NCBI GenBank assembly: GCA_002269645.1 | Contig: NIVC01000175.1 | Location: forward strand, 1 to 64,000 | Length of the DNA stretch: 64,000 nt | Direction: 5' to 3' | DNA from: Macrostomum lignano | Taxonomy: Eukaryota | Shown: positions 1,928-64,000 of the stretch, piece by piece | Layout of the letters: each line of letters begins with the position of its first letter | Position numbering within the stretch: the stretch's first letter is position 1 | Notes under the pieces: model-generated | Told to the model about the DNA's origin: nothing | What the model saw: only the letters and a program-made list of their open reading frames with translations | Databases searched by the model: none | Program-made: the position numbers and the translations under genes

Positions 1928-2511
1928 ATTTCCTGTCCTTTCTAAAAAGTTCTAAACCTACATGATCGAAAATCATTTTGATCAGAAAGCTCTGCATGGG
2001 ATTGGCAAGAACCAGAAAAAGATTGGCTGACGAGCTGCTTCACCTCAGAAATCAAAATTGAAAAATATAATCTAGTCGATTATAACAAAATACTAAAATC
2101 GTGTCGCGCTAATTCTCGACAGCTTATGTCTTCTCAGTTGACTGAGAAAATATACTAAATTTTTCATAACAATCAATCTGAAACCTTTCGATAAACTACA
2201 ACAGGTAGCTACTGAAATTTGATGAGGAATATTTTACAAGCGTATTCACCCCTGATTGACAGCTCTCCGAGAGTACGACCTTTTTGCACTCATATTGGCT
2301 CAGCTGTCAGGGTAGTGTTTGGGAGTGCCAACAGGCAATTTTTTAACGCTAAAAATTCTGCATACAGGTCTGAGTTACTTGTGAAACAGAAATGCCATTA
2401 TGATACACTTTTGAAGTATTTTTGATTGCATTTTTAATTTGGTGCTGTTGGCACGGCCTTCCAGGGTTTTCCTAGCATTTCCCGTAGCCTACTCTCTGTA
2501 ATCCCCACATG

Positions 2512-3873: not shown

Positions 3874-4344
3874 GTCCCTCACTGCAACGGAGCTGTCAGT
3901 CAGCCCTATTGTTACTGAAACCAATAGCATTTATTTACAGCTTCCGAGAGCCACCTATTCTCAGTACAATCGATTCCCATAAAAAATGACCCTGGCCTTC
4001 AAACTCGCAAAAAATTATTTCCAGACCAGCCACGCCAACTACGCATCCGATTTGCATTAGTTTGATAAACCTGTCAATCAAATGCAAAATGTGGAGAGAA
4101 ATTAATTAGCACAAGTATTGATCAGCGAGCCTGTGGAAACTATAATATACTCGGCTTTGTAAAGTGACTGCAGGGGTGGCATCTCTAGCAGCTTAAACTG
4201 ATTATTTTCACTTTAGAGTGCAGCAGAGCCCATCGGTTACTATAGGCAAACACTTGTACGATTGGTTCCTGAATGGGGCGGTGGCATGGACTACTCGTAT
4301 GAAAGCTCGTCTTTTTAGTAGCTGTGGGGTGTTTCATAATGGCG

Positions 4345-5799: not shown

Positions 5800-36373
<30,574 letters not shown>

Positions 36374-37017
36374 CCAATTGTATTGTTGATTAAATTGATT
36401 GATTGTAGTACTGACTTGAATATTTTTGTCTTTGTTAGTTAGTTTCTCACTGCCTTTGTCTTATGGTTTAAATGTTGAGTCGAATTTGTTATATAGCACA
36501 AGTTAAAGTTCATAATTACGTGTAGATTAAATAGGCTGATTGTCGAGGATAATCAACGCCCTTATCGAAAATTAATTTCCTAGATTAAAGGAAATGTTGG
36601 CTGTTCTGATTTTAAAATAATTTTTTATTATTTAGTATTTGTTATATGTATGGCGGTCGATCTCATCGGACTCTGTTGACAGTTTTCAAGTTTGCCCGAA
36701 CTTTAGAGATTTTTTGCTCCCTTTTTGGCCTATGGCTACAATTCACATCCGCCATGTTGATTACGGCTCGTATATGCGTTTCAGACCGAAGACCAAAGTT
36801 TGTGCTAATTTATTGTCGTTTGAGTCTGAGATTTTCCTAAACAGGGGCAAACCAAAATAAAAAAAGCATACGAGTTGTTTTCAAAAGCAATTGTGCCATT
36901 TATAATGAAGAAGCCTATTCCAATAGTAAACTGTAAAATATATTTCACTTCCTGCATGACAGCTTCGGTCATTATGTTGTAAAAAGCGTTAATATTTTCT
37001 GGTGCAAAAACTCAAAT

Positions 37018-37272
37018 ACCAACTTGACTTATTAGGCTTGACTCAGTTTTAGGGGGGATACAGCAGGGAGGAGGCGCTGCGGTGTCGCCTAGGAAGATCC
37101 GGTGGTGCCGAGATCCAGAAGTCCATGAGTCCTGGAGGTTGATAGTCGCTGGCCCGGTAGCCCTTAGGTAGCGGACGAGCTGGCTGAAACTCTCGGGCCT
37201 GAAAATGCATGAAAGGCCGGGTTTGGTCTGAGGTAAGTGATTAAAGTCCTGAGTTAAAGGCGGAACATTCAC
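37018..37272 (-). mobile_element. 5'-truncated LINE 3' end, diverged relative of 52455-52707
   Basis: Minus-strand peptide RPESFSQLVRYLRATGPATI, UTR motif GGCGAC..CGCCTCCTCCCTGCTG and tail GAGTCAAGCCTAATAAGTCAAG. Confidence 0.55.
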
Positions 37273-38358
37273 AGATGAAATATTTTTCGATAATGTTTAC
37301 ATTTAGACACCCAGTTTTAATAACCTGCTTCTGTGTGCCAGCCGAACTTCAACCAGTTTTTCTGCTTTAATTATTTTCCGAAGCACCTTAGGAAGCTCAA
37401 AAAGCTTTTGACGGCCTGGAAGAACAATATTTTTGTCACGCCAACGTTTCCATTAAAATTAATTTGGATTGACGCGAAATGGATGAAATATTGGGTTGCT
37501 CATGAAACTATCCACGCAGAAAACAGTGTTCGACACGAGATCGTCAATCAATCAATCAATTCTGACATCCTTCGCGTGTGACATCTCACTTCATTCAAAC
37601 GATTTGATTTCGATCTTGTAGAATTCGATTTCAGTCCATTGCTTAGTTAATTAATTAAAGTGCCCAACCAATTTTCAACCGAGATTCGGTTTAAGTGTTC
37701 AGATGAAGCTTTGTCAAAGACACTTAGCTAGGGCGATGCTACTTTGGTGCGACCATCAGTTTCAGCTGGGTTAGCCAATCACTGCAGAACTTAATTCCAT
37801 CTGAGTAAAATCATGCTGCTGGATCCAGCCAATGAGATGCAGCGTGGAACTGGGCTTATTTAACTCAACAGATATTCAAGCGAATCAGGTACTTTATTTT
37901 CCTTTAGAAAGCAACTTTGGTACAGGTGATTATGCGCAATCGCTAGAATAATTAAAAGAGGAATCAAAGCCTTGTTAAAATTCATTTCGACAATAAAAGT
38001 GGGCCAACCTTTGAGGTAAGAAAACTAAAAGTTCTTTTTGCCGATTTGAGTAAATTTTAACTTACATTGAGTTCAGCGCTTGAACTTCAATAACAGTAAG
38101 ATCATCAGTTTGGGGCGAACACTTTTAGCTGTGTAGGTTCCTTTTAATCTGCATGTCCTGCACCAAGAAATAAAACCGCGCACTCCCTATAGTAGACAAT
38201 GTTATCAGATAAAATATACAGGACACAAAAATTTTCTCACGTGATCAAAGAAACATGCAGATTCCAAAAGATGCATAATAACTTCTATTGATTTTCTGAT
38301 TTGTTATTTTAAAAACCTGTCTGCAAAACCAGACGAGCTGAGGAAAGTCCACAGTGCA

Positions 38359-41300
38359 ATGCAAACTTGGCGCCTGCTACTGCCGCTATGCCTATTCTGC
38401 CTGCCAGCAATCAACTGTCAACTGCGAGTGGAACGTAACAAAATTAGCAGCGTTTTCTGGGAGTACCATGCCTGTAAGCGACGCGCGATAACTTAATAAC
38501 ACTGTTTATTCAAGGCAGATATTTTCAATTGCTGCCCACAAACCAAACCAGGGAGCCGCAATACGGGGCGAAAACTATCGAGCAACGACTATCAACGGGA
38601 GCTGCCGGTGTCTGAAACTGAAGCTTCCGAGCTCAGTGAGTCTGCTGAATGACGTCATTAATAGGGATTAAATGTTTCTATAGCTGTTTGGTTAAAGACA
38701 ACTTTTTTGTCAGAATTGTCCCTAATATTTATTCCGTGAATTCCGCGAAAACAAAGGCAAAAATACACAAACTCTCGCGTTTCACAAAACCAATCGGCTA
38801 TTTTCCATCAACTACTCGTACAACAGCTTTCACTGCTTAATGGAGCGGCAGAATTATGAAAAAAATAGCGACTGGATCTGCCTGCTGACCCCTGCGATTT
38901 GCATTGGAGGGGACCCAACGGGCACCGGACAGGCTGTCTAAATCCCAGGGCAGTTGGCTGAGAAATGAAGCGGGCGAGAGAGCGCTCTGCAAACTGCAGC
39001 AAGGATCGTTAAGAGGGGAGGGCCAAGCAGGAATGCAGATAGAGGTCGGATCAGCAGTGGAGCATGACTGAAAAGCCAGGCGAATGAGTATGGTCAGATG
39101 CTAAATGACTTTGTTATTAGGCCGCAGAACCAACTGTTGCGGCGAGTAAAATCTACCAGTTTCAGTAAAATGCATGCCGTACTCCCACCCTCAGTGTGCA
39201 GCACTCTATCCCAGCTACCTAGCGACGCAGATCTGGTGGCAATTAGCGGTACATCATTTCATCCAGCTCTAAACCGGTTCTGCCAGCTAGCTAGAATAGC
39301 TTGCGTCTACACGGACAGCCAGGTAGCCAGGCACATGCCCACAGACTGGCAGTACAATGCCATCAACTTCTTTCCCGCACCCGAGCTGAGAAGTCGGTCA
39401 ATCTACGAATTCGTCAAGTGGAGCGAATGGACCGAATTCGCTGTGCTTTACACCGGATTTCACGGTGAGACCACTGCGTAGTCGTTTGGTTCGAGTTTTC
39501 AAATAGCTACTTATACCTTGCAAATCCTTCCTAGATTTGGAGCGAATGCACACCCTGCTGCCATTCCCCAATGGTCACGTGATGTTCCGCATGATTAACT
39601 TGGACTTTCCTAGCCTGACATTTCGGTTGCTGACTCAACTAAAGCTGACTACTATGCACCGGTTCCTGCTCGCCTTGCCGCAGACTCTGGTACCCAAATT
39701 TCTCAATCTAGTGAGTATTTGACAAATATTATCAGTTTAACAAAACTCTAGTCTGTACTTTGTTGGTACTAAACATAAAAGTAACCACTATAGTTCCTTG
39801 GAAAGTTTTCACATGCTAGAACACGACGTCTGCCAGAAATAAATGTTTCTATCTCCCTCATAAATTTTGAAAAGAAAATGAAGCCTTTGAAATTTTTCCA
39901 AGAATCGTCCATCATAGTTTAAAATAGTTATAAATTCTATATTACGTTAACTATTAAAAAATTAATATACTTCAGGCCTCTGCAGCGAATTTAACAAGCA
40001 TGGCCTACAATTTCCTTCTCGTTGGCGGCGTAAGTAAACGACAATTATCTTAAATACATAAATATGGTGTAACACAGTAAATAAAAACGCGTGAAACTGC
40101 CCCACCAAGATTCAGGAGAGTCCGTAGTGCAGTAATCGCAGTACAATTTTAGTGCCAACTCACGCAGCAATATATAGTGTTTTGGGGGCGAAAGCGCCTG
40201 TATAATGCTTAGTTGATAGCGGATCTATTAAGTGACCTTAGCGAGCAAAATTGGGTTGGCGATTAAACTGGACTGATCTAGATGACAGTTCCCGGTCCCA
40301 TAGTCGGTTCCGGTTTTTTAACCGAACGATTTGAAACGAGGAATCTAGGCAGAATGAAAACTGGGGAAGACCGGCAGATGAACAACATTCATCAGTTCAC
40401 TCTACTTTCTCTGGTGCTTTTTATGAAGTTCTGGTGCTTTGAGAAGCGTACACAGGCTTTTTTAAGGGTCAGGCAATGAGCCAGCATCAGGGGCGCTAAA
40501 AAGAGAACCGCCAGCACCAAGCAGCGCCAGACCCTTACAGATGCAGACTATTTACTATGCATGTCTTTATACAGAATTTAAGCACTGATCGGTTCTGATT
40601 AAACATTCAAATTAATTTAGCCTCCGGTAAAGCTAGAAAAAACCTTTTACACTAGTAAAGAGAGGATCGAGGAGAGAGGAGAGAGGAGAGAGGAGAGAGG
40701 AGAGAGGAGAGAGGAGAGAGGAGAGAGGAGAGAGAAGGGAGGAGAGAGGAAAGAGGAGAGAGGAGAGAGGAAAGAGAAGAGAGGAAAGAGGAGAGAGGAG
40801 ACAGGGGAGAGGAGAGAGGAGAGAGGAGAGAGGAGAGAGGAGACAGGGGAGATGCGAGAGGAGAGAAAAGAGAGAAGAGAGAAAGGGAAAAGATAAGAGG
40901 TTAAAGAGGAGAGATGAGATTATAGAAAAGCTAGGATGGAGGGCAGATAATAGAGGAGAGAGAGGGGAGGAGAGAGAAAAGAGTAGAGAGAAGAGAGGAG
41001 AGAAAAGATAAAACAGCAGATATAAAAGAGGAGAAATGAGATATGAGAGAGTAGAGAGGAGAAAGAAGAGAGAAGAGCGGAGAGAGCAGAAACGAGAGAG
41101 AACAGAGGAGAAAGGAGAGATAATAGAGGAGAGAGGAGTGAGGAGAGAAGTTTCAAAGGACCCGATGGACGTAGAGAAGGGCAGAGGCCAGAGGCCAGAG
41201 TTTTCCAACGCATGCCTTTGACAGACATTGCCTGTCATTCTGCTTGCCTGAAATCTTAATTTAACATGAATTTACTCCCGTTTTTGTTTACCTCTATCCT

Positions 41301-44300
41301 AAGTATTAATTAACAAGTTTTTGTTTGTTTGAGTATGATTTCAGATTTTAGAACTCATGCAAAAATAATTCCCGGGATTCAAATTCCTCGGGTTTCAACA
41401 GCTTGTTACTAATCTAAAACCGTTCTACTAATCTTGCAGATGAATCGAACCTACTTCAGGGAGCACGTTGCTTCGCGGCTCTACTCGGGCGTGAACTTCA
41501 CCTCGCATCAATTCGATGGAGTCAGCTTTATAGACGATCCAGCGTCGCAGAAAGTGAGCTGACTAATATGAAATGTGTTGACTGAGCTTGTTTTACTAAC
41601 AATTGGGTCGTTGAAGTGGATGGGTAGCTAAGTAGTTACGCGTCCGGCTCTCGCATCAGAGTCCTCTGTGCACAGATTAATGCCATTCTCGACGACCATG
41701 AGGACCAAGCCCCAAGACAGAGAGTGTACATGCCTTTAAACGATGAGAATGTCAGGGCTGCGGTACACCCTGTGTGATCGTGTGCGTGCTGAGGGATCGA
41801 CAGTTCAAGCATAATTGCAGCTAGATTCGTCGCTGGCAACGGATCGCCTGCTGGCTTTGATTTAGAGAGCAGTGCTTAAAGCTACCATTTGAGCCTCAGT
41901 AAGATGTGGCAGAGAAATGCTTTGCTGGAATAGGCGTCGAAACTCATAACTAACTCTGACTGGCTTTAACTGGCTTTTACTAATGGTAAATTTACCGAAA
42001 GCTGCAGCTGTGGATGCATCAAATTCTGTTTGCGAACGTGCTCTGTTGGGACAGTAATGCAGTTAATCTGCGTAAAGTGACAAGAATCTTTACTTCATTA
42101 GCAAATTGTTCATTAATTGTAGGCTTGAATTTTGCTCTTTGCTCATCGCAAATTTACGCCGTATTGACAAGCGGCAAATAGCTAATACAGAAAAGATCAG
42201 ATGAACTTTCCAGTAAACCTGAAGGTAAAGTATTACTCGCTCCGTAATTCACGCGATCAGCAAAGTTGACACAGCACAAACTAATCGATTTATGACTCCA
42301 TTATTAAATGTTTTTCAATCTGTCTATTTGCTTTCACTATGCAAATTACAGATCGAACTGACTAGGACTGAAGCTATCAATCGACTACTGCGAGACGCTT
42401 ATGCAGAGTGGAACCGCAGCCTCGGGCAGACCCGGCTCGCACTGACCGTTCGCAACAGCAGCTCGACTAGCGACGACATTCGCGTGCTCAACAACTGTCA
42501 CATCCGCCTTGGTGATAATACATCCGAGTTTTATCTGCGACTTGATGTAAGCAGTGCGCAATTTCCGGTAAATTTTTACACCTTAAACGGAGTTCAGAAC
42601 CGCTACAAATTAACTTGCAGAGCAACATCAAACGCCGAGTTGGAGTAGTGACAGTAGGAGGCAGTTCTGTGTACAACTTCAGCTTCTGCGTCAACCACAT
42701 GTACACGGATACGGCGCCCAAGGTCAGCTGTTCCTGATTTAATTTTTTACGCGCTAGATTTATCTTTCATAATGATCAGGCAAATAGCCTCGCTAGCCCA
42801 GGGCCTAATCCGAGGCCACTGGTCCATCAGCCTGTCCGTCAATTCAGTCAATCAAGCCTAAGCTAAACCAAGTTTACTTGCATCAATCAGCACTAGTAAT
42901 ACTCGTATGGTCGTTGCCAGTTGGTGCAGCACATTCGAATCCAGCATCGATACTGCAGCGCCCTCGTTATCTCCTCACCAAGTCGCCCCACCTTCTGTTG
43001 TCTTTGAAATCGCGTTTTCAGACTCCGGAGATCAGCGATGGAGTTGTAAAAGTACGAACCGCATTTCTTTTCCTCGAAATATTGTCCATACTAAGCATTT
43101 ATTGTTTATTTTGCTGATCGAACAGACTTTGACGTAACTTCCTCGGTACTTTTCATTTCCACGAAAATTTCATTATTTCTGCATGCTGAAACGTTTAATC
43201 CATAACGACGTGTATTTGCTGTGGGATCGGTGTTTTTGTTTGTTCGCGCTCTCAGCACAAGTAATTGGCATACATTAGTTCCTTCTCTAATGTGGATTGA
43301 TTGTACCAGGCATAAGGGGATATTATCTCGTAATATTTCTAGTATGTGCATGCAAGTTCGCTCGAGCTCACCCCAAAGGCAGCAGTGCACGCTTCCAATG
43401 TTTAGCGATTGCTTCTCCAAAGAGAGCAAAAACCATTAAGCCTTAAGTCTCATGGCGCTGAGCAGGGCAAACATTTGCTTAGCTGACGATGGTATATAAA
43501 AGCCTTTCTAAAGCACACACATGGCTCATCAGGAACTGACTTATTCATACTTTTGGCGCATAGCTGTTCTTGGACACCAGGGCCAATACAAAGTATAACA
43601 AAGTATATCCAAAATTTTCCTAAAAATCTGTGATTCTGTCTAAAATTTAAAGATAACAGACGATTTTCAGAACTTACCTTAACATTATACATTTATCGTA
43701 ATTCTTATTAAGTTGATTAAGGAAAAGACAGCACTAAAAGAAACATACGATTAATTTTTATGGTTCAATTGCTAAGATATTTTGCACTCCAGTAATTTTG
43801 ATTTGTAATAAATTAAAACAACGCAGGTGTAATTTTTCTTTTGCGCTTTGTAATTCATTGAATATTTATGGCGTTGATAAGCCAGTTTTATGATAGTTGC
43901 TCTTTCTCACACATGTTTCTATCTATCATTATCAAAATTGTTGAAGAGTAATTATTTTGACAATTTTATAGCGAAGCCAAACAACTCAAAATATTTCTGC
44001 AGTTTGCCACATGGACAGCTGATCAAGGCTTCAAGCTGACACCGGGCGCTCAGTACAAGCACAGAAAGTACTACGAAGACCTTTTGAACGACATGAATCT
44101 CACTGTCGTGACCGTTGTCGACCCGCCCTTCAGTTTTCAACGGGACTTCGACGAGGATGGCAATAGACTGACTGGAAACGACCGCTGGACGGGGTTCTCC
44201 ATTGAGCTGTTTAAACAGGTGGCCAAGAAGATCAACTGTAGGTGAGTTAGGGCGACATTAATCTGGGGCTTGTGTACGAAAACTGTACCATGAGGGCCAA

Positions 44301-47300
44301 CCCCCAAGGCACACAAGGCCCGTTCTATAAAGCCATCGTAAGATAAGATCGTTCTTAGCTCCTATCTCCGCAGTGTAAAAGTTCTTACGTACGATCGAAC
44401 GTACGCTCCGACAGTTTTATAGTATGACCCCTGACCCCCTCGACTCTTTATATATGTACATTTACATTGTAGACATTATAGAAAGTTCACCTAGTCGCAA
44501 AATTGATTGTTGAAGAAATTGGCAGTCGAAACCTTCCGTGCAGCTCTTTAATAAATTATTTCTATACAACATACGTCCTCGCCTAGGCAGTGAAGAATTT
44601 CTTCCAAAAGTGGTCTTATTGGTGCCTATCTATTCGTGTTAAAGAATACTAAATTAGATATCCGGCAAGCAAAGTCTCAAAAATCTTTCAGAATATTTAA
44701 TTGGGCTTTTAGAAAATCACGTGAAAATTCGAGCGCACTTTAAAATTTGAGGGTAAGCAAACCATCCTCAGATAAACAAACTACGGCAAAAGTACACATC
44801 AAAATATTTGCTGAAGTGCACTTAAACGTTTCTTGTCGTCACTTAAAATTCGTTTTCCTCATTCATTTTTAAACTTTAATTCAATCAAAAGGACGTCAAT
44901 CTTATAGTACTCAGAATGGTTAATCTGAGACCTAGTTTTGATTCCCTAGCGAGAAGTTGGAGCCTTGAGGTCATTTATTTAGTATTCCGCTCCAGCCATT
45001 CAGTTTTTATAGTAAGAATTCTATCAAATTCACAAAAATAATGAACTTGCTGATCGTTTACGATATGAATTTATAAATTCTGACGATACTGTAAAGCAGT
45101 TATCAATCATAGTTTGTCATAAAATTTCTTTGACGCAGTATCAAAAAGTAATCATTTTAAATTCAGACCTGCGTGACGCAAAAAATCAAATATTATCAGA
45201 TTGCTACACAGCTTCAGCACCGGGATGGAAAATGAATGGGCGGATCTGTACTGCCTCCTCGTGAAGTTAATAATTATGAATAAATAAAAATAATTTATCT
45301 TCTGGGTCAGCGACTTGAAGTTATGGCCCTATCGAGCGATGGAATATATATGACTTCTGTCTGAGCGTAAACTAAATATTGAGTGGTACACTCCTGCTTT
45401 TAGAATCCCAACTAATTTAGGTACCTAAGGTAACCTACCTAAGGTGCTTCAGTAAGTCCAAGTTTCGTCTTGAATGCATTGCACCAAATCCTGTTGCTGG
45501 CGCCCCTGGTGCTAAAACCTCTGGTGCTGGCGCCCCTGATGCTAAAGCCTCTGGTGCTAAAGCCCCTGGTGCTAAAACCTCTGGTGCTGGCGCCCCTGGT
45601 GCTAAAGCCCCTGGTGCTAAAGCCCCTGGTGCTAAAACCTCTGGTGCTGGCGCCCCTGATGCTAAAGCCCCTGGTGCTAAAGCCCCTGGTGCTAAAACCT
45701 CTGGTGCTGGCGCCCCTGATTCTAAAGCCCCTGGTGCTAAAGCCCCTGGTGCTAAAGCCCCTGGTGCTAAAGCCCCTGGTGCTAAAGCCCCTGGTGCTAA
45801 AGCCCCTGGTGCTAAAGCCCCTGGTGCTAAAGCCCCTGGTGCTAAAACCTCTGGTGCTGGCGCCCCTGATGCTAAAGCCTCTGGTGCTAAAGCCCCTGGT
45901 GCTAAAACCTCTGGTGCTGGCGCCCCTGATGCTAAAGCCCCTGGTGCTAAAGCCCCTGGTGCTAAAACCTCTGGTGCTAAAGCCCCTGGTGCTAAAGCCC
46001 CTGGTGCTAAAGCCCCTGGTGCTAAAACCTCTGGTGCTGGCGCCCCTGATGCTAAAGCCCCTGGTGCTAAAGCCCCTGGTGCTAAAGCCCCTGGTGCTAA
46101 AGCCCCTGGTGCTAAAGCCCCTGGTGCTAAAGCCCCTGGTGCTAAAGCCCCTGGTGCTAAAGCGCAGATTCAAGCTAGGGTTGATAACTGTCAACAGCGA
46201 GTCGCCCTACCACTTAAACAGATACACAATCCGGTTGAGTCGCGACGGCCAGTTCGGCAGTCCATCCGTGGACAAAGCCGGCAACACGGTGTGGAGCGGC
46301 ACAGTTGGCGAGTTGATCGCTGGTACAGCCGATGTCGCAGTAGCTTCTTTGGTCATTACCTACGACAGAGAGATGGTGAGAATTAGTTTTTCAACGAAAG
46401 TTTTAACAGTAAATGTGACTGTGAGCAAGCAATTATGTTTATTCACTTTTTGGGCATTTTAGAATACTAGGCTGTTTAACAACCCCGGGGGGGGGTTGGA
46501 GCCTAGTGATATTGTAGCGTCGGACTCATATCTGAAAGGTCGGGGTTTCAATTCTCAACCCACTCGGAAGAATTTGTGTCCTTGAGCAGGGCACTTTACT
46601 CTGCATTGCTTCAGTTCACCCAGCTGTAAAATGGATGCCAGCATTAGCTGAGGTAATTGAGGGTGTGTGGTGACCCCCAGTCCTTCGACTGAACAGCAGT
46701 ACGCAGCCTTCAGATGCGACGCGCAATAGCTGCGGCTGAGCTGTCGGTTGCACATCTGACATTAGGGCAGGTGTATTCAGTTGATATTAATTAGAATACT
46801 GGGAGATTCTCAACCTCAAATCTGTCAGCTAACGAAAAGTAGAATCGAACACCCAATGACTTCATCTGGAGCTGTTCCTTTGTCTTTGTCTGTTCGGTAA
46901 AGGCTGTTTGAGAAATGAGACGAAAATATTCTGTCTGTATAGTTTATCTCGTACATGCAGCTGTGCTAGACTGTTAGCATGAAATTTACCGTTTTCTTTC
47001 GGTGTGTAGCTTAGATTGAGAGCAGGGCGTAAGAGTGTTTATAAATTGGTAAACTTTCTGGGACACTCGTTCTACGTTTACTGCAAATTGGGATGTCAAA
47101 TTCAAGTCTTGCTTGTCCCTCAATCGAGTTTCACAGTCAGAAATAATTCAGTCTCTACACTTATTACAGTTTAATTTAAAGTATATCCTAAATAATTCCA
47201 GCTTCCACATGCAAACTGTTTATTACGGCACACGAGAATACTTACTTAGAATATTTGTCAGTGAAGCACTGGCGGGCTAATATGAAGGCTTATTTCGCAT

Positions 47301-50300
47301 AAAATGATCTTTGGCAAAGATCATAACTTACACACCATCTACCAAACGGTTACGCTCTGTAAACATTCAAGGTTATCGACTTCACTACGCCGTACATGAG
47401 TCTGGGCCTGAGTCTAATTATGAAGAAGACTGAACAGGAACAAGATCTATTCCAGTTTCTTCTGCCATTCAGCACAAGAGTGTGGGCCTACATGATGCTG
47501 GCTTGGCTGCTTGCCAGTTTAGTGATGTACTTCTGCGCCAGGATCAGCCCCTACGAGTGGTATTCGCAGAGTGCTTGTGTACCAGTAGTGGAGAATCAGT
47601 TCAATGCCTTTAACAGCCTCTGGTTTACCATTGGATCTTTGATGCAACAAGGTATGCCTCGCTATAGTTAATAGCCTTTTAGAGATTCATTTTTAATTTG
47701 TTTAGCGCCCGTAAAGATCAACCATAGAGTGTACATTCCCATCGATGAATATCATTACGGCTGTACACGATGTGTAAATATAGGCATTACTCATTTACAT
47801 CCGTGTTTTTGACTGGCACTTCGATTATCACAAGTACAAAAGTCTTTGGCTACCAGCTAAAAGACACTATATTAAATATCAAACGTCTCAAGCTATGAAT
47901 AAAATGCACGATAAAAAATTTCAGGCTCCGACCTCGCACCCAGAGCATCGTCAACTCGTATGGTGGGCACAGTGTGGTGGTTTTTCACGCTCATTCTGAT
48001 CAGCTCCTACACAGCTAACCTGGCCGCCTTCCTCACCGTGACCCGACTAAACGCTGTGGACAGTTTGGACGCGCTGGCCGCTCAGAGCAAGATCAAGTAC
48101 GGCTGCGCTACGGGGGGAGCAATGTTCAACTTCTTTAAGGTGATTTTACAGAGTGCAATGATGTCGAGAACGTGGTGCTGGAAGTGGTGCTATGCTGCTC
48201 TGGCAGCCTTAAGCTAAGTAAATCGAGACATTTATTTTATCTTGGATTGTAAGCTAGGAGTTTACGGTGTTTTACTATTTTTTTAAGCCATGAATGTGAA
48301 GAAGAAAGAGTTTTAAAGCGATGTAACTGCTACAAGCCTGCTAAATTTCAATTTTTCTGCCTCTTACGCATTTGAATAGGCCAGTGACCCTGGTTTGTTT
48401 GTCTACTTTATAGACAAGTTGTGTAGCCTTCCATGGTTCTTGGCGTAAGTTTTCAGCAATTATCGAGAGGAAGCCAACTAAGAGTGTCCATTGAGCACTT
48501 ATAAGACCATTTCAACGCTTTTACACAGACTATGCTTTACATAGCGGTCCTAATTAGGGCTATAGTATGGTGAAACCGAACTAGTACGGAAAGTGTTGAC
48601 AATCCTATTCTACAAATCACAAAGCTCTGTTTAACAAAGGTCCATGAGAAGGATTAAGGACTATCGTTAAGCTTGCTGCGTACTTTACCGCCGTTAAGTG
48701 AACTTACATTGTGCCTGCAAACCAACATTCACCCCAACAGAACTCAAAGATACCAGTCTACCGCAGAATGTGGGAATCGATGGTGCTGTGGAACGCCACA
48801 AATGAATCATTTGTTAAGAAAACAATCGAAGGCATCGCTAAAGTGAGAAAGGGCGGCTATGCCTACGTGATCGAGTCGACGTTCAATCAGTATTACAGGG
48901 AGAGAGACTGCAACCTCACCCAGATCGGAGGCATCTTCAATCCGAGTAGTTACGCGTTCGCTGTGCAGCAGGGAGGTGAGTGTTGCTGCTTACTCATAGT
49001 AGCTAAGAACCAATTTTACGAGAGATTTATGATTACAAGGGACTAGTTGCAAAAAATTTGAGTATGTCGGTCCAATGAATATTTTGTTAAGACTCTAGAG
49101 AAGTCTTTACATAGCTGAGAAACTTAGTTTGTGGTTCAAAACTTTGCCTTTTCAAATTGTCATCGCAAATAACTCATCCATGTAGTTTTCAAGGAGGATG
49201 TCACTTTGCCAAAGACCACCGCGGGAATCGGTTTCATAAAACACGTGTTTAACAAATTTCAAGTTGAACAGTAATAATTCTGACTTACACTATCTGACCT
49301 AAGGCAATTTGTATTGTCACTTCTAGTTGACACATTGTCACTTGTCCCTTGTACTGGCTTGATGAACTAGACCTAGATTATGGATGCTTTCGATTCAGAA
49401 TTTTCGAGTTTTACAAATTTAGGTAGCAATTACCCGTCATGCATATGCTTTTCAAAGATCTAGATGGTGATGAAATTGATAAAACGATTTTATGGCTTCA
49501 TTTTAGTGATTTTTGTCCTCTTTTATGGCAATTAAAAATGAATTGAATTTCAGCCAACCTTCTAAAAGACAAACTAAGCGAGGCTATTCTTCAGCTGCAC
49601 AAGGAGCAACTGATCGAAGGTCTGACAGACCGATGGCTGAAGAGATTCAACATATCTGGCAAGCCTTGCAGCGAGACCGTGTCAGACCAGTCCAACATGG
49701 GCACGCTGGATGTTGACTCGGTTGGCGGGGTGTTCGTCACTCTGCTGCTGGGCCTGGCTCTGGCTCTGATTCTCTGCATCGCCGAACTCATCTATCGGTC
49801 CTGCGTGCTGGCCTCAAGGAACAAGGTTTGACTTGCTCTTTTTTCAAGAAATTTAGGAACTCTTCCATAGTTGTCTTTCGTTTTCACGTATGTCACGTAG
49901 CTAGAGATCAGGCATGATGCTATCAAATAGAAGTCATTTAAAGTGATGAGATCCCCGCATCCATCTTTGGGCTTAAGCCTCATGTGTGTGCGTACATGAA
50001 GCAGCGCACGGAACGAACCACTGGGTCTTTGACGCTAGAGCCAATCACGTTATAACTGAGCAACTTTGGCCTCTTGTCTTCCATATACTTTCTAAACCAG
50101 AAGATTCTATATTACCTAGATGGGCCACTCCACCCGTCTAGCAGCAGCGCTAGAGTCCCGGAGTTAAGACCATAGACTGTAGCTTCTGCTGCTCTCAAGC
50201 ATTAGCAGCAGCTAGTGTCTATGGTCTAAACCCTGGAGTTTTTGAGGCCTCAGGATGGCCGTTAAATAAATTTGTGCTGTAAATTACAAACTAATAAGAG

Positions 50301-50565
50301 CACAATTTATCATAGCTGCCTACTAATAGTAGCTCTTTAACAAACCTGAAATTTCCAAATCCTAACTTTTCTGCAGCAAACTTCTTTCAAGCAACTCTGC
50401 GCTGCCCAAATCAGACTGGCAATCAATCTGTGCACCAACAAGAAGCCAGAACCTGCCGAGCAGGCGGAGCCACTCAACAACCGAGTCCGGGTCGACAACA
50501 GCTCCTATACTCTCGACCTGGCTGAAAAGCGGGCGCCACTTTGCATCGAAGCCGATGGACTGTAA
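38359..50565 (+). CDS. GRIK: Ionotropic glutamate receptor, kainate-like (AKDF family), 15 exons, ~908 aa
   Basis: Exons: 38359-38473, 38519-38635 (both tentative), 39195-39464, 39535-39710, 39976-40029, 41440-41553, 42352-42546, 42621-42722, 44003-44241, 46222-46375, 47372-47651, 47925-48139, 48741-48975, 49554-49825, 50377-50565. Motifs: ATD INFFPAP..WSEW and YSGVNFT; S1 [24 protein letters not shown]; M1 then SPYEWY; M2 [14 protein letters not shown]; M3 [21 protein letters not shown]; S2 [17 protein letters not shown]; M4 [11 protein letters not shown]. Family is certain; kainate subclass is inferred from SPYEWY..VVENQF. Confidence 0.93.
40667..41145. repeat. Purine-rich (GGAGAGA)n repeat, degenerating 3'
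   Basis: 7-bp unit. Confidence 0.85.
41695..41790 (+). mobile_element. SINE family B internal fragment (further fragments near 18535-18590 -, 44285-44320 +, 52330-52445 -)
   Basis: CCATGAGGACCAAGCCCCAAGACAG..GTGTACATGCCT..GTACACCCTGTGTGATCGTGTG matches the family B body. Confidence 0.6.
45497..46162. repeat. 15-bp minisatellite
   Basis: Unit GGTGCTAAAGCCCCT with GGTGCTGGCGCCCCT variants. Confidence 0.95.
46494..46775 (+). mobile_element. tRNA-derived SINE, family A (MIR/CORE-like), copy 1
   Basis: A-box-like GAGCCTAGTG and degenerate B-box; core GTGTCCTTGAGCAGGGCACTTTACTCTGCATTGCTTCAGTTCACCCAGCTGTAAAATGG; high similarity to 53780-54045. Confidence 0.8.
50160..50233. mobile_element. Short palindromic MITE-like hairpin element, copy 1
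   Basis: AGACCATAGAC..GTCTATGGTCT outer inverted repeat plus GCTGCT..AGCAGC inner one; its reverse complement matches 32401-32485. Confidence 0.6.
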
Positions 50566-52074
50566 CACTGTAACTCACACGAAAAACATTAAAGATCTTA
50601 GTAAAAAAACACAGTCCTCTAGAGTTGATTCAATGCTTGAAACGTCAGGAAAAGTATTTTTTCAAAGAAAAAAGACATTGCTAGACACGGGAAGTAAGGA
50701 TAGACCCACATCCTCGCCCCTCCCCTCCATTCCGAATCTGAAATTTGACATTTTGCACGCTGACGAAATTCGCGAAAACGTCACGAATTTTTTTATTCTA
50801 AGTTATCGAGTTGCAATTGGCTATTGAACTTTAATCGGATACAAATTTTATTTTAATTTTACGCTTTTAGCTCTTTAATGCACGACCAAAGTAGTAGGAC
50901 TCAATCTTGCAATTAATTTGATAGAAATTTCCCCATTTTTTAGCAATATTTTATCCAGAATCGCATCGACTGTATTTTTTCTAGTCTAGTTTTCTCTATC
51001 CATTATGGTCTATGGCTAAACCTGGTGTCAAAACGAAGTTGAAATTCACGGCAGGCCGCTCGATGAAACTGTCCAGGGTAAATTTTCACTTAATTAGGCA
51101 CTAAAGAACGACTGGGAGCACTGGAGCGATTCTTCACTCACAATGCCGTGCAGTACTGCCACCGATGGCATTCATGCATGGACAACAGAGAAACAATTTG
51201 CTATGCTAGCTAATTACAACTACAACTGCAATCCAACTGCTCTAGTTGTCCATGAGATCTTATGCCTTATTAAATATTTCTTCGTTAATTCGGAATTTTC
51301 GAATGTTTAAATTCAATGCTATAAAATTTTTACCTCGTACATGTTTGCGCATTTTTAGTCACGTTTTGCGCTTTTTAACTCTATTCGGATTCGACTCTCG
51401 CTAACTTATCAGAGAGCATTGCAAAAGGCTTCATTTTTCGTCAGAACTTTGAGCGCGATCAGATCATTAATTAGAATCTGCACTAGGATCACCATGTGTA
51501 CAAGTCGAATGCTTGCTTGCAGTGAGTAGTAACATTGATTAATCTGATACTCTTTAACTGTATGTCTTCATTAATAACCTTCTTTTCATTGCTAATTAAA
51601 ACTGTCTCATGACTGATTGCGGAGATCTAGTTGGATCAATGACGAATATCTTTTTAGCAATCTGCTGGTAGGTTCCTTAAAACAGAAAATATTTGCTGAT
51701 AAAGTTTTTTTTATTAGTTCGTCTTTTAATTCATTTTAGTGAAAACTTAAGACTCGATGGTCTTAAGAATCCGGTAATGAGTCTTACCGATTGCGGTATC
51801 GATACCGATTGCGGTAATAATGCAATCGGTAATGACAACAAGAATCCGGTAATGATTTAACGTTCGATTAAACTTGTCTTACACAGCCGTATGTAAGCAA
51901 TTGAAGCATACGTATTCTGCGGCATGAAGGCCCCTCTTATATTCTCGTTTTTATAGCTTTTTGTAGCCTATTTAAGCTTACACGCATTGAGTTTAATGCA
52001 ACTTAATTCAGGATATGTTTTTTAAAGTAATTGCGCTTTTGTGTATGGTGGCAACGGTGCTCAGTGCTCCCAGA

Positions 52075-54687: not shown

Positions 54688-57600
54688 ATGGCAGCAAAAC
54701 TGCAGCTTATTGTTGCCGTTTTCATTGCTGTTCATTCGACTGAAGCCTCGGTGCCGTCATATAGAGGTCAGAACTTGCTTTAATCGCATTGCGTTTTACT
54801 ATTCTACCTTTTTGTATTTGTAAGTAATTGGTGCCTCATTTTATTCATCACATTCAAACTGGTTCCTTTGAACCGCTGTAACTTGCGCCAACTAGCCATG
54901 TAAACTAGCTCGTTGCCAACCCGTTAGTGTAAGGATCGGAACGTTCCGGTCCGCGAAGCCTCTCTATCCGGTCATCGGGTCCTTTGAAACTTCAAAATAA
55001 CAATCCGACCTGCTTGAGTTTTGCGTGTATGCTCAGCTCCCATACTTCTTTTCTCCATATTCTCTTTTCTCATCTCTCCTCTCCTTTACTCTCTCTTCTT
55101 ATCTTCTCTCATCTCACAACCACTCGCTGCCTGAATGACTGCAGCACCTTCTTAACTAGCTAACATATTGATAGCTAGCCGTTCTCTTCCACTGCCTGCA
55201 GCCAGAAGCCGACCGGCAGTCTGCTATAAATCTTTAAGCATCGATGCCGGGAAGCCGCGACGCTCTGACGACGACTCAGAGCGGCTCGCAGGCAAGCGAA
55301 TCGTCAACGGCCGGGAGTCAAGACACGGGGAGTGGCCATGGATGGTGTCACTGCGCAGTAGATACCTCGAATTTTACGATTTCGTTGCCACAACTGCTGG
55401 TGTTCCGCACAAGAATCATATTTGCGGCGGCGCGCTCATCTCAACTAGATGGGTTCTGTCGGCGAGGCACTGCTTTAAGGATGGCACGGTTGAGTATCGT
55501 AAAGATGGCAGGTGAGTATTTTGATTGGGTATGTGAGTATGGGGTGATTTAGACAGGAATGAATGCAGCCATTTAGACACTATTCAATTGGGCGATTTAG
55601 GCATCCCTGAGTTAAGTGATTTAGACACGATTAAATGAAACAATTTAGACATAAATCGCCTAAATCGCGGGCGATTTAGACAGGCCTTAATAGAGCGATT
55701 TAGACAGGCCTGAATGGGGCGATTTAGAAACGATTCAATGGGACGATTTAGACAGGCCTTAATAGGGCGATTTAGAAAGGCCTTAAAAGGGCGATTTAGA
55801 CAGGCCTGAATGGGGCGATTTAGAAACGATTCAATAGGACGATTTAGGCAGGCTTGAATGAGGCGATTTAGACAGGATTCAATGGGGCGATTTAGACAGG
55901 CCTGAATGAGGCGATTTAGACATCCCTGAATTGAGTGATTTATACACGATTCAATGGAACGATTTAGACAGGCCTGAATGGGGCGAATTTGACATAATTC
56001 AATGGGGCGATTTAGACACGACTGCACAGGGGCGATAGTAAGACGACTCTACACGAGGCTTACGAGCGTAAAAGTACGTACATTCACTTGTCATTTGTCT
56101 TTTTCCCAGAACTCCACCCATCTACCTTTCCTTATACAGGAACATAGTCAGATATCTGACAAAAAGTAACCCCAAAGACTGGTTAGCTGTCATCGGAGAG
56201 CACGAAATACTGCAAGAGGACAACACGGAGCTGGAAATCCCGATTCAGAAGATATTTCTATCTCCAATTTACGAAGGTAAGAGTAGTTCGAAATGTATGA
56301 TAGACACTTTTGCGTGTATTATTGTTGCACTATGACAGTTCTCTATCGCCTATCAAAGTTATCAGAGGAACCTTTGCAAGATGATTTATGTGAAAGACAA
56401 GATCCAAGTAATTGTTTCCTACACGAGCATCAAAAATATGTCCATACAACCCATTCACTACCACCGATAGCCAGCCCAAATGCTGAGCCGTACCACCAGG
56501 ATATGGCTTTGCTCAAACTGAGTCGCCCGGTGCCACTGTCCGAGTATGCTCAACCCGCCTGCCTGGAAGACCCCGGCCAAGCCGCTAAGCCTGGAGACTC
56601 GTGCTTCATAGCTGGATGGGGCAGCGTCATTACTGGTGGTAAACTGGAATTTACATCGCTTTTTTCCATTGCTTTATTTCGTACATTTGATGTAACCGCC
56701 CTTGTCGCCTGTCCGCTCCGTTGAGAGACGAACGCATGACCAGAGGGGGCAATGACCGTAGGCTGCCTATGACCGGGCAATGACCTGACGGACCTCCAGC
56801 ACCAGACTGTCCCAAACTGGGTATGATCGGGAACTCTGGGCTCAATCTGGAGGATTTCTCAGCAGGGGATCCTTTGTGGCTGTGAGCGAGGCTGACTTGC
56901 GGCTTTAATTACTAAGAGTAGTGTGGGGCGAACATGTACTGTCTCTAGTTTAGATTGCTCAGGGCGAAGGGACGCGTCAGCATGGGGTTGCAACCTTCCT
57001 ACTTCCATTCTGTGCCAAGACTCGCTAATTCCCTCTACTGCACGCACACACGGACCCGCAGCACGCATTCACAGGCGGGCTTTGCACGGGGAGAGGCCAT
57101 TAGCTTACCCAAACTTCCCTATGCTTTGCCACCCCGGGAGAAAGGCTTAGCGAGCTATGAATTAAATGATGGTGAAAGTGTGAATAATGAGGAGTTTAGT
57201 AATAGTTAATAATTAGGCCCTTAGGCAAGATAATCAGGCAATTAGGCGGCTTCACTATTGAGTAAAATACAGCAAATAATACGGTATCACAATTGGCTCA
57301 GCTCTCTAATCAAGCAATGGGAAATAGGCAAACCCCGGATAAGCAAGGCAATTAGAGCACAAATTAGTAACAGAAACTTACCGGCAGCTGCACAGAGAGA
57401 GAGAGAGCGACGGAGTGACCGTGGGCGGCTGTTGGCTGCAGACAGGCAGACTGGGAAGCGGCGATGCGCTGAAGCGACGAGGCGCTGATGTAATTCAGGC
57501 GATGCTGAAGATGCTGGGCGGTAACAGACCGCTGGCCGGCAGACGAGCTCACTTGGGGAGCCCAGGTGACTTGGCGGTAACAGACCGCGGACCGGCAGAC

Positions 57601-61857: not shown

Positions 61858-63288
<1,431 letters not shown>

Positions 63289-63296
63289 GTGAGGCC

Positions 63297-63735
63297 TGAC
63301 TGACTGACTGACTGACTGACTGACTGACTGACTGACTGACTGACTGACTGACTGACTGACTGACTGACTGACTGACTGACTGACTGACTGACTGACTGAC
63401 TGACTGACTGACTGACTGACTGACTGACTGACTGACTGACTGACTGACTGACTGACTGACTGACTGACTGACTGACTGACTGACTGACTGACTGACTGAC
63501 TGACTGACTGACTGACTGACTGACTGACTGACTGACTGACTGACTGACTGACTGACTGACTGACTGACTGACTGACTGACTGACTGACTGACTGACTGAC
63601 TGACTGACTGACTGACTGACTGACTGACTGACTGACTGACTGACTGACTGACTGACTGACTGACTGACTGACTGACTGACTGACTGACTGACTGACTGAC
63701 TGACTGACTGACTGACTGACTGACTGACTGACTGA
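63297..63735. repeat. (CTGA)n microsatellite in intron 4 of the second protease
   Basis: Perfect CTGA run starting 8 nt after the donor. Confidence 0.97.
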
Positions 63736-64000
63736 ATTGAGCGCGTGTGAGTGGGTGACTGCCGGACTGAAAATTGGGACAAAAAATCAGTGTTTGATGA
63801 ATGCAAATAAAAAATAATTACATAAATAAACAGAAACTCATCGAAACCTTTTGCAATCGCATTAAAAAACAAAGCTACCCAGCTGTGCTATCCACCCAGG
63901 AAGTGGGGAGTAAAAAATGAATCGAATGAAAAACTAACTTCTAAAAAGTGATTCATCAGTGTTTATGTCTGGCATTGTCTACAGCTTCCGTAAATTCCTA

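What the first reader, a model, noticed from the sequence alone, without database searches (positions are those of the whole stretch)
46222..48975. Kainate-like receptor with an altered agonist pocket: possibly gated by something other than glutamate
Seen: the pore and gate are canonical ([13 protein letters not shown]), and the alpha-carboxyl Arg (AGA 46367) and alpha-amino Glu (GAG 48873) are kept. But the S2 motif reads GGAM (ATG 48122) where AMPA and kainate receptors have GST or GAT; the S1 PLT/PLA motif reads SLV (46346-46354); and the stacking Tyr of DGKYG is Phe (TTC 46253). Established: the Thr (GluA2 T655, GluK2 T690) hydrogen-bonds the glutamate gamma-carboxyl; glycine-binding GluN1 has Val there and Phe at the Tyr position. 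Ala at the preceding position is normal in GluK2 and is not counted as unusual. Inference: Met may exclude glutamate, giving a receptor for small or hydrophobic amino acids, or a non-liganded heteromer subunit. Unlike glycine binders it keeps Glu, not Asp, at position 705.
Basis: partly seen in the sequence, partly recalled or inferred. Interest (0 to 1): 0.72.

Follow-up and report, generated by a model that had tools for sequence, protein, structure and literature searches.

The report
Flatworm glutamate receptor, remodelled agonist pocket
This is an intact, selectively maintained glutamate-receptor-type ion channel gene of the flatworm Macrostomum lignano whose ligand pocket has lost the residues that normally hold glutamate's side chain, so it may have stopped being an ordinary glutamate sensor, but this has never been tested.

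Summary
The four exons at 46222-48975 are exons 10-13 of a 15-exon, 897-aa gene (38359-50565, + strand). The window is Macrostomum lignano contig NIVC01000175.1, and the gene is the annotated but uncharacterised BOX15_Mlig020845g1 (PAA88780.1).

The pocket is truly odd:
- Among 275 nearest homologues, the Thr that binds glutamate's gamma-carboxyl is T in 253, S in 18, L in 1 and never M.
- V at T480 occurs once. A at L650 never occurs.
- A canonical paralogue in the same species (A0A1I8GG29, 66% identical) keeps T, L and G-S-T.
- Six of 17 pocket positions changed on this gene's branch and none on the paralogue's (enrichment p=0.002). Overall rates are equal.

The gene is not decaying. A second genomic copy carries the same pocket, with 12 synonymous and 4 non-synonymous differences (dN/dS 0.10).

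Published data point both ways. The same Thr-to-Met change in human GluN2A abolishes responses to 10 mM glutamate. A sea-anemone receptor with G-S-L is still glutamate-selective.

Weakened or lost glutamate sensitivity is plausible, and the agonist is unknown. The glycine reading is disfavoured because G653, E705 and Y732 are kept. Interest is moderate.

The parts
38359..50565 (+). Whole gene: 15 exons, 897-aa iGluR subunit, identical to M. lignano PAA88780.1 (BOX15_Mlig020845g1)
   Evidence: Spliced model with all introns GT-AG and no internal stop. It is 100% identical over 897 aa to P0320. The annotated gene lies at the same coordinates of NIVC01000175.1, and the sequence is identical.
38359..38473 (+). 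Exon 1: start codon and signal-peptide-like N-terminus ([20 protein letters not shown]...)
38552..38635 (+). Exon 2 (amino-terminal domain)
   Evidence: The frame was chosen from the NCBI model, and because the difference between the two copies that falls in this exon is synonymous only in this frame.
39195..39464 (+). Exon 3 (amino-terminal domain)
   Evidence: A home-made ATD profile hits it at E=2.9e-5. It agrees with P0318.
39535..39710 (+). Exon 4 (amino-terminal domain)
   Evidence: tblastn with the Schistocephalus ATD gives E=0.004. Splice sites were read.
39976..40029 (+). Exon 5 (amino-terminal domain)
41440..41553 (+). Exon 6 (amino-terminal domain, YSGVNFT motif)
42352..42546 (+). 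Exon 7 (amino-terminal domain)
42621..42722 (+). Exon 8 (end of amino-terminal domain)
   Evidence: tblastn with P0266 gives E=0.002.
44003..44241 (+). Exon 9: ATD-S1 linker and start of S1 (position of GluA2 E402 is Asp)
44242..46221 (+). Intron 9 with a 15-bp minisatellite (CCTGGTGCTAAAGCC); non-coding although open in frame with exon 10
46222..46375 (+). Exon 10: S1 upper lobe. F461 (TTC 46253), S492-L-V494 (46346-46354), R499 (AGA 46367)
47372..47651 (+). Exon 11: M1 and pore loop (MQQG; Q593 at the Q/R site)
47925..48139 (+). Exon 12: D597 at the +4 site, M3 with SYTANLAAF, and the start of S2 with the remodelled loop C-A656-T-G-G659-A660-M661-F (GCT 48107, GGA 48116, GCA 48119, ATG 48122)
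48741..48975 (+). Exon 13: S2 lower lobe. V709-I710-E711 (GAG 48873), F714, C723, Y737
49554..49825 (+). Exon 14: end of S2 (C783) and M4
50377..50565 (+). Exon 15: 62-aa cytoplasmic tail and stop codon
   Evidence: Its end coincides with the end of the annotated 222-aa gene in the second copy.

Best explanation
SHOWN: the finding is exons 10-13 of an intact 897-aa pore-forming ionotropic glutamate receptor subunit of Macrostomum lignano (PAA88780.1). It belongs to a flatworm group of AMPA/kainate-like receptors and arose by duplication. Its closest relative in the same species (A0A1I8GG29, 66% identical) has a canonical glutamate pocket. After the duplication this copy evolved at the same overall rate as its paralogue, but its first-shell agonist contacts were rebuilt: T480V, L650A, S654A, T655M, L703V and L704I. 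These changes remove three hydroxyl groups, including the one that hydrogen-bonds glutamate's gamma-carboxylate. The residues that clamp the alpha-carboxyl (Arg499) and alpha-amino group (Glu711) were kept, as were Gly659, Tyr737, the disulfide cysteines, the Q/R-site Gln, the +4 Asp and SYTANLAAF. The gene is under purifying selection. INFERRED: the subunit still binds an alpha-amino acid and still gates a cation pore. L-glutamate at normal potency is no longer its agonist. Glutamate sensitivity is lost or shifted to the millimolar range. The distal, now apolar, sub-site most likely accommodates a neutral aliphatic or sulfur-containing side chain. The subunit may act as a homomer or together with the canonical paralogue.
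For: Gene identity and integrity. Uniqueness of V, A and M among 275 homologues, and their absence from all 10 other flatworm-clade members. The only two unshared departures at 85 highly conserved columns are the two ligand threonines. Six of 17 pocket sites changed on this branch against 33 of 422 elsewhere (Fisher p=0.002), with 0 of 17 on the paralogue branch, and there is no overall rate difference (30 vs 23, p=0.34). Purifying selection between two genomic copies that share the same pocket (12 synonymous, 4 non-synonymous, dN/dS 0.10, binomial p=1.6e-5). Experimental precedent at homologous positions of glutamate-binding GluN2A (PMC12199545): T690M gives no current at 10 mM glutamate; T690A has EC50 5254 uM against 6.1 uM; T513A has 810 uM; T513I responds only at 3-10 mM; S689A is harmless. 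GluA2 GST to SSV or SAV, both of which replace T676, drastically lowers glutamate potency, and T676 matters more than G674 for potency (PMC13648236). [quoted passage not shown]
Against: No functional or structural data exist for this protein. The Exaiptasia AKDF receptor 110238381 has a native G-S-L motif and is strongly glutamate-selective, and a single T-to-V change in GluA2 does not alter preference. In that survey Gly at 653 occurs in every glutamate-selective receptor and in none selective for another ligand. Gly653, Glu705 and Tyr732 are all glutamate-type. The authors themselves warn that these residues predict poorly. The pocket changes could equally reflect relaxed constraint on ligand binding. 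The dN/dS estimate rests on only 16 differences and says nothing specific about the pocket. No model with coordinates was available to check whether the Met side chain occupies the ligand site.
Confidence: 0.4

Rival explanations
1. It is still a glutamate-gated subunit. Glutamate's gamma-carboxylate is held by the backbone NH groups of residues 660 and 661 at the helix-F N-terminus and by water, so the loss of the Thr hydroxyl only lowers potency. A low-affinity synaptic glutamate receptor results.
For: The wild-type Exaiptasia receptor with G-S-L is glutamate-selective, and GluA2 T-to-V keeps its glutamate preference. Gly653 is found in all glutamate-selective receptors of that survey. Glu705 and Tyr732 are glutamate-type. 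Ala at 654 is normal in GluK2, and GluN2A S689A is harmless. Nonpolar residues at the T480 position occur in glutamate-selective receptors.
Against: GluN2A T690M is unresponsive to 10 mM glutamate, and T690A shifts the EC50 about 860-fold. Here the change is combined with T480V and L650A. None of 275 AMPA/kainate-like homologues tolerates Met, or any residue other than T or S, apart from one delta-like sequence with Leu.
Confidence: 0.3
2. It is a subunit that no longer needs an agonist. It would be an obligate heteromer partner, for example of the canonical paralogue A0A1I8GG29, contributing to the pore, trafficking or kinetics while its own binding site is silent. The pocket substitutions would then reflect relaxed constraint.
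For: The excess of substitutions is confined to the pocket, while the pore, gate and the rest of the protein stay constrained. A canonical paralogue exists in the same genome.
Against: Arg499, Glu711, Gly659, Tyr737 and Thr686-equivalent remain intact, although they would also be free to drift. All six changes are conservative in volume and all point the same way, toward an apolar pocket. None is disruptive.
Confidence: 0.2
3. It is a glycine, D-serine or alanine receptor of the GluN1, delta or epsilon type.
For: It has a hydrophobic residue at 655 and Phe at the 450 position, as in GluN1. Ramos-Vicente et al. listed 'Gly653 plus non-polar 655' proteins as glycine candidates.
Against: Glycine-selective and other non-glutamate-selective receptors in the 2026 survey never have Gly at 653, and introducing Gly there lowers glycine potency or efficacy. 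It has Glu rather than Asp at 705, Ile rather than Trp at 704, and Tyr rather than Phe at 732. The Phe at 450 is shared with canonical-pocket flatworm relatives.
Confidence: 0.07
4. It is a decaying pseudogene, an assembly or sequencing artefact, or the Met exon is one of two alternative exons.
For: None beyond the oddity of the residues. ACG to ATG is a single transition.
Against: The 15 exons carry no stop or frameshift, and all introns are GT-AG. dN/dS is 0.10 against a second copy with an identical pocket. The motif is also present in entries A0A1I8GZE8 and A0A1I8HPW7. T480V and L650A each need two base changes. No second copy of exons 10, 12 or 13 exists in the window.
Confidence: 0.03

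Closest known systems
Macrostomum lignano paralogue A0A1I8GG29 (P0266; uncharacterised PBPe-domain protein)
   Same: Same species. It is 66% identical over 462 aa and is the sister in the tree with 100% bootstrap. It shares the lineage traits Phe450, Ser478, Asp402 and the unusual hinge motif FNP(S/M)SYAF. Pore and gate are identical in type.
   Different: It keeps the canonical pocket: T480, L650, G-S-T and L-E. None of 17 pocket positions changed on its branch, against 6 on this gene's branch.
Vertebrate kainate receptors (GluK2, e.g. PDB 9mzi; GluK5, GluK1/3)
   Same: They are the best solved-structure matches (E=8e-86, residues 478-767 of GluK2). Architecture is the same, as are Q at the Q/R site, SYTANLAAF, Arg, Glu, and Ala at the 654 position as in GluK2.
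   Different: Identity is only about 44%. GluK2 has G-A-T where this protein has G-A-M, Val where it has Ala650, and Tyr where it has Phe461. The amino-terminal domain is too divergent for Pfam ANF_receptor. Placement within kainate rather than AMPA receptors is unresolved.
Human GluN2A variant T690M (and T690A, T513A/I)
   Same: It is the same amino-acid replacement at the homologous gamma-carboxyl-binding Thr of a glutamate-binding iGluR subunit. T513 corresponds to T480.
   Different: It is a pathogenic loss-of-function mutation in an NMDA-type subunit: no current at 10 mM glutamate and reduced surface expression. Here the change is fixed, accompanied by five further pocket changes, and maintained by selection.
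Exaiptasia diaphana AKDF receptor 110238381 (native G-S-L motif)
   Same: It has Gly at 653 and a large hydrophobic residue at 655 in an AKDF-clade receptor.
   Different: It is experimentally glutamate-selective. It has Leu rather than Met, is a cnidarian lineage, and the rest of its pocket was not compared here.
Protostome chemosensory ionotropic receptors (IRs)
   Same: They are iGluR derivatives defined by loss of one or more of the Arg / Thr / Asp-Glu glutamate contacts. This gene has lost the Thr.
   Different: This gene sits inside a clade of canonical flatworm iGluRs with a canonical sister. It keeps an N-terminal domain, Arg, Glu and a fully canonical pore. No IR sequences were compared.
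Adineta vaga GluR1 (AvGluR1)
   Same: It is an iGluR activated by hydrophobic amino acids (methionine, cysteine, phenylalanine) as well as glutamate. This is a precedent for the proposed ligand class.
   Different: It is bacterial-like, K+-selective and phylogenetically remote. It uses chloride ions as a surrogate for the side-chain carboxylate and does not have a Met-for-Thr pocket.

Membership tests
Ionotropic glutamate receptor superfamily | Ligand-gated channel core and S1 ligand-binding segment (Pfam Lig_chan, Lig_chan-Glu_bd) above curated cut-offs | tested here: met
   Lig_chan scores 143 bits (cut-off 30.8). Lig_chan-Glu_bd scores 104 bits (cut-off 30).
Ionotropic glutamate receptor superfamily | M1, pore loop, M3 with the SYTANLAAF gate, and M4, with S1 and S2 flanking the pore module | tested here: met
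   The translation shows MQQG (Q593), D597, SYTANLAAF from residue 622, an M4 exon, and the disulfide cysteines C723 and C783.
Ionotropic glutamate receptor superfamily | LIVBP-like amino-terminal domain | tested here: inconclusive
   A 370-aa N-terminal region exists. A home-made ATD profile hits exon 3 at E=2.9e-5, and the Schistocephalus ATD hits exon 4 at E=0.004. Pfam ANF_receptor is not detected even at E<=1. UniRef names two fragments of it 'ANF_receptor domain-containing'.
AMPA/kainate receptors (within AKDF) | Phylogenetic placement inside the AMPA or the kainate clade | tested here: inconclusive
   In the neighbour-joining tree the gene falls in a flatworm-only group (59% bootstrap). 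The branch point of that group relative to kainate and AMPA clades has 8% support. Solved-structure scores favour kainate (291 bits) over AMPA (268 bits).
AMPA/kainate receptors (within AKDF) | Arg485 (alpha-carboxyl) and Glu705 (alpha-amino) contacts | tested here: met
   R499 and E711 are present.
AMPA/kainate receptors (within AKDF) | [quoted passage not shown] | tested here: not met
   The residue is Met661. Among 275 homologues it is T253/S18/L1/M0.
AMPA/kainate receptors (within AKDF) | Activation by L-glutamate | not testable with these tools
   This needs electrophysiology or binding assays.
Glycine/D-serine-type iGluR pocket (GluN1, GluN3, delta, many epsilon) | Ser (or Tyr, Ala or Arg) rather than Gly at 653; hydrophobic 655; Asp at 705, often preceded by Trp; Phe at 732 | tested here: not met
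   Only the hydrophobic 655 is present. The other positions are G659, I710-E711 and Y737.
Variant ionotropic receptors (IRs) | Loss of one or more of the Arg/Thr/Asp-Glu contacts | tested here: met
   Thr is lost. Arg and Glu are kept.
Variant ionotropic receptors (IRs) | Descent within the IR clade (IR25a/IR8a and tuning IRs) | not tested
   No IR sequences were included. The gene's sister is a canonical iGluR of the same species (100% bootstrap), which makes IR descent unlikely.

The most novel reading that the evidence does not exclude
This may be the first member of the bilaterian AMPA/kainate branch to have switched its agonist away from glutamate, to a neutral or hydrophobic amino acid or another small metabolite. 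It would have been caught soon after duplication, with the canonical paralogue still present in the same genome. That would be an independent flatworm re-run of the step that produced chemosensory IRs from synaptic iGluRs, with only about six pocket substitutions separating the two states.
Probability: 0.25. Interest if true: 0.75.

Novelty: new variant of a known kind. Interest (0 to 1): 0.5.

Why it matters
Ligand switching among iGluRs (glycine, D-serine, GABA, aspartate, alanine) is now documented in the epsilon, delta and early-branching AKDF receptors. The AMPA/kainate-like receptors of bilaterians are still treated as uniformly glutamate-gated, and sequence rules for predicting the agonist are admittedly unreliable. 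This gene offers a natural and minimal test pair: two paralogues in one tractable laboratory flatworm, 66% identical, whose pockets differ at six first-shell positions. One of those positions carries the exact Thr-to-Met change that silences human GluN2A. If the agonist has changed, the pair would show which residues are enough to re-tune an AMPA/kainate-type pocket, and would reveal a new transmitter or chemosensory modality in flatworms. If the receptor is still glutamate-gated, it would show how a receptor tolerates a change that is pathogenic in people. Either outcome would sharpen function-from-sequence prediction.

Tried and rejected
(1) 'No relative closer than 53%, organism absent from the databases'. 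This was wrong. The 897-aa protein is filed under a 374-aa cluster representative, so searches with the core did not show it. An ATD query found it, and the window proved to be M. lignano NIVC01000175.1.

(2) A0A1I8GG29 as the orthologue in another species. Rejected: it is a paralogue in the same species.

(3) My first exons 1-3 (870-aa model). Rejected because a 1-bp indel in the second copy breaks that frame, because the difference between the copies that falls inside exon 2 is non-synonymous in my frame but synonymous in the annotated frame, and because of the NCBI model.

(4) Stop codon right after M4 ('RNKV*'). Replaced by a splice to exon 15.

(6) Alternative or mutually exclusive copies of exons 10, 12 and 13: none found.

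(7) Pseudogene or sequencing error: rejected.

(8) Constitutive activity through a hydrophobic residue at the Asp/Glu705 position (Seljeset et al.). Not applicable, because Glu is kept.

(10) Literature searches for the locus tag and for Macrostomum iGluRs found nothing specific.

(11) Structure prediction was not run. The tool returns confidence and fold matches but no coordinates, so it could not address the pocket.

Full report
OBSERVATION. I read 46000-49200 and translated it.
- TTC 46253 is Phe in DGQFG.
- TCT/TTG/GTC 46346-46354 is S-L-V.
- AGA 46367 is Arg.
- ATG 48122 is Met in G-G-A-M.
- GAG 48873 is Glu in V-I-E-S-T.
- MQQG and SYTANLAAF are both present.

The interval corresponds exactly to four GT-AG exons: 46222-46375, 47372-47651, 47925-48139 and 48741-48975. 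The best solved-structure match is GluK2 (E=8e-86). The residue-by-residue alignment puts the Met on GluK2 T690, the Val on A518 (GluA2 T480) and the Phe on Y488.

WHAT AND WHERE IT IS. tblastn with homologues found an S1 exon upstream and an M4 exon downstream. Weak profile and tblastn hits revealed a divergent amino-terminal domain further upstream.

A search with that N-terminal region hit Macrostomum lignano BOX15_Mlig015638g1. Its contig (L001) is colinear with window 36000-51115 at 95-99% nucleotide identity, introns included. The cluster also holds an 897-aa protein, PAA88780.1 (BOX15_Mlig020845g1), which is 100% identical to my final 15-exon model. That gene lies at 38359-50565 of contig NIVC01000175.1, assembly GCA_002269645.1. 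The fetched stretch is base-for-base identical to the window at the same coordinates. The window is therefore the first 64 kb of that contig.

The gene is annotated but named only 'hypothetical protein'. I found no paper mentioning it.

Two earlier conclusions of mine were wrong and are withdrawn: that no relative exceeds 53% identity, and that the organism is missing from the databases. The full-length protein is hidden under a 374-aa cluster representative. My first exons 1-3 and a stop directly after M4 were also wrong and were corrected.

HOW UNUSUAL THE POCKET IS. I aligned 275 nearest homologues from two searches. Positions use GluA2 numbering.

| Position | Residues in homologues | This gene |
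|---|---|---|
| T655 | T253 / S18 / L1 | M (0 of 275) |
| T480 | T245 / S13 / A11 / V1 | V |
| L650 | L / V / I / K / R / F | A (0 of 275) |
| S654 | S239 / A26 | A |
| L703 | mostly L | V (0.7%) |
| L704 | mostly M or L | I (5%) |

The ten other members of the flatworm clade all read T480, R485, G-S-T or G-S-S, L-E and Y732. They include three M. lignano paralogues.

Of 85 alignment columns conserved in at least 90% of homologues, this protein departs at eight. Six of those departures are shared with its closest paralogue, A0A1I8GG29. The two that are not shared are T480V and T655M.

I polarised the differences between the two paralogues with the flatworm consensus:
- 6 of 17 first-shell positions changed on this gene's branch, and none on the paralogue's.
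- 33 of 422 other positions changed on this gene's branch (Fisher p=0.002).
- Tajima-type counts over the whole protein show no rate difference (30 vs 23 with the Calicophoron outgroup, p=0.34).

The substitutions are thus concentrated in the agonist pocket of an otherwise normally constrained protein. All six remove polarity or keep it apolar, and total side-chain volume stays roughly constant (L to A, T to M). That last point is my own arithmetic, not a structural result.

Phe for Tyr450 and Ser for Pro478 are lineage traits shared with canonical-pocket relatives. The published survey finds no link between these upper-lobe positions and selectivity. They should not be counted.

IS THE GENE ALIVE? 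All 15 exons are open and all introns are GT-AG. The second genomic copy (L001) encodes the same SLV, CATGGAM and VIEST residues. UniRef entries A0A1I8GZE8 and A0A1I8HPW7 also contain [11 protein letters not shown].

Across 2,691 aligned coding bases the two copies differ by 12 synonymous and 4 non-synonymous changes: A111G, D312G, R323G and A699T. None of these is in the pocket. This gives dN/dS 0.10, and the binomial probability of so few non-synonymous changes under neutrality is 1.6e-5. Introns differ by 1-4%. No duplicate or alternative versions of exons 10, 12 or 13 exist in the window. Pseudogene, artefact and alternative-exon explanations are rejected.

FAMILY PLACEMENT. Pfam Lig_chan and Lig_chan-Glu_bd are far above threshold. 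ANF_receptor is not detected.

In a neighbour-joining tree (394 columns, 200 bootstraps, amphioxus delta-like outgroup) the results were:
- The gene pairs with A0A1I8GG29 at 100%.
- A trematode sequence joins them at 78%.
- An all-flatworm group of 11 forms at 59%.
- Whether that group is nearer kainate or AMPA receptors is unresolved (8%) (names).

'Kainate-like' is fair by similarity but is not demonstrated by phylogeny.

WHAT PUBLISHED EXPERIMENTS SAY.

For loss of glutamate sensitivity:
- In GluN2A the gamma-carboxylate is held by the backbone NH of S689 and T690 and by the T690 hydroxyl.
- T690A raises the glutamate EC50 from 6.1 to 5254 uM. T513A (the T480 equivalent) raises it to 810 uM. 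S689A leaves it at 7.4 uM.
- The disease variant T690M gives no current at 10 mM glutamate. T513I responds only at 3-10 mM (PMC12199545).
- In GluA2, replacing G-S-T by S-S-V or S-A-V drastically lowers glutamate potency. T676 matters more than G674 for potency (PMC13648236).

Against:
- The wild-type Exaiptasia AKDF receptor 110238381 has G-S-L and is strongly glutamate-selective.
- GluA2 T-to-V alone does not change preference.
- Every glutamate-selective receptor in that survey has Gly at 653, and no receptor selective for another ligand does. The authors stress that predictions from these residues are unreliable.
- By the five-position rule (653, 655, 704, 708, 732), this protein is glutamate-type at 653 and 732 and not at 655.
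- Ramos-Vicente et al. already noted six proteins with Gly653 plus a non-polar 655 and left them unpredicted, calling them 'candidates to bind glycine'. The general category is therefore known, although outside the AMPA/kainate group.

MECHANISM.

Shown: this is a pore-forming, selectively maintained subunit. Its alpha-amino-acid anchor (Arg499, Glu711) and gate are intact, and its distal pocket has been made apolar.

Inferred: glutamate potency is lost or strongly reduced. The preferred agonist, if there is one, is a neutral amino acid. The subunit may also work in heteromers with its canonical paralogue.

My probabilities are:

| Reading | Probability |
|---|---|
| Altered agonist | 0.40 |
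| Glutamate retained, probably at low potency | 0.30 |
| Silent heteromer partner | 0.20 |
| Glycine-type | 0.07 |
| Artefact or pseudogene | 0.03 |

NOVELTY AND SCORE. The gene is annotated and the receptor family is well known. What is new is a fixed, selected Thr-to-Met pocket, with five companion changes, inside the AMPA/kainate-like radiation and next to a canonical paralogue. I rate it a new variant of a known kind, with interest 0.5. It is a good experimental candidate but not yet a discovery.

LIMITS.
- The tree is distance-based with few reference classes.
- The dN/dS estimate rests on 16 differences.
- The census covers the nearest 275 homologues, not the whole superfamily.
- No coordinate-level model or docking was possible.
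- The correspondence between GluN2A and GluA2 numbering, and the GluA2 contact list, rest on established structural knowledge and on the alignment, not on a structure computed here.

Noticed in passing
window up to about 36373, + strand: The gene immediately upstream is annotated with VWA_N, VWA, dCache_1 and VGCC_alpha2 domains (1344-aa product). It is a voltage-gated calcium channel alpha2-delta subunit whose 3' end lies about 2 kb before the iGluR start codon.
   Followed up: no
window 55156-55512, 56072-56721, 59463-59732 and 62542-63296, + strand: These are exons of two tandem trypsin-like serine protease genes (Pfam Trypsin E=1.5e-12 and 1.5e-8). The best database relative is an M. lignano peptidase S1 protein at only 65% identity, probably a paralogue.
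   Followed up: partly
window 45490-46163 (intron 9 of the iGluR gene): A 15-bp minisatellite (CCTGGTGCTAAAGCC) is open in all frames. A mechanical ORF list therefore fuses it to exon 10 as a 330-aa 'protein'. It has 19 exact units here and 62 in the second genomic copy, so copy number is variable.
   Followed up: partly
L001 (NIVC01004392.1, reversed) 10001-23925: A second, 95-99% identical copy of the whole gene exists in the same assembly. There it is annotated as two separate genes: the ATD only (Mlig015638g1, 374 aa) and the S2-M4 tail (Mlig027531g1, 222 aa). Exons 9-12, which include the pore and the Met codon, are left unannotated.
   Followed up: yes
window 38359-42722 (exons 1-8): The 370-aa amino-terminal domain is so divergent that Pfam ANF_receptor does not detect it even at E<=1. 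Only a home-made profile and flatworm sequences give weak hits.
   Followed up: partly
window 48930-48960 (exon 13, residues about 731-740): The hinge motif that reads D-S-K-G-Y-G in more than 90% of homologues reads N-P-S-S-Y-A here and N-P-M-S-Y-A in the canonical-pocket paralogue. This is a lineage-level change next to the binding site that predates the pocket remodelling.
   Followed up: no
window 2400-3930, 5900-6480, 7090-7660, 13880-14490, 23750-24480, 28330-28900, 40630-41240, 63100-63870: The window is dense with minisatellite arrays that give long repeat 'ORFs' on both strands. The one at 2-4 kb raises GC content to 61% with strong GC skew.
   Followed up: no
database behaviour (versus 67, 78): The exact 897-aa protein of this window is in the protein collection but sits in a 90% cluster represented by a 374-aa N-terminal fragment. 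Searches with the LBD/TMD part therefore could not return it and suggested, wrongly, that no close relative exists.
   Followed up: yes
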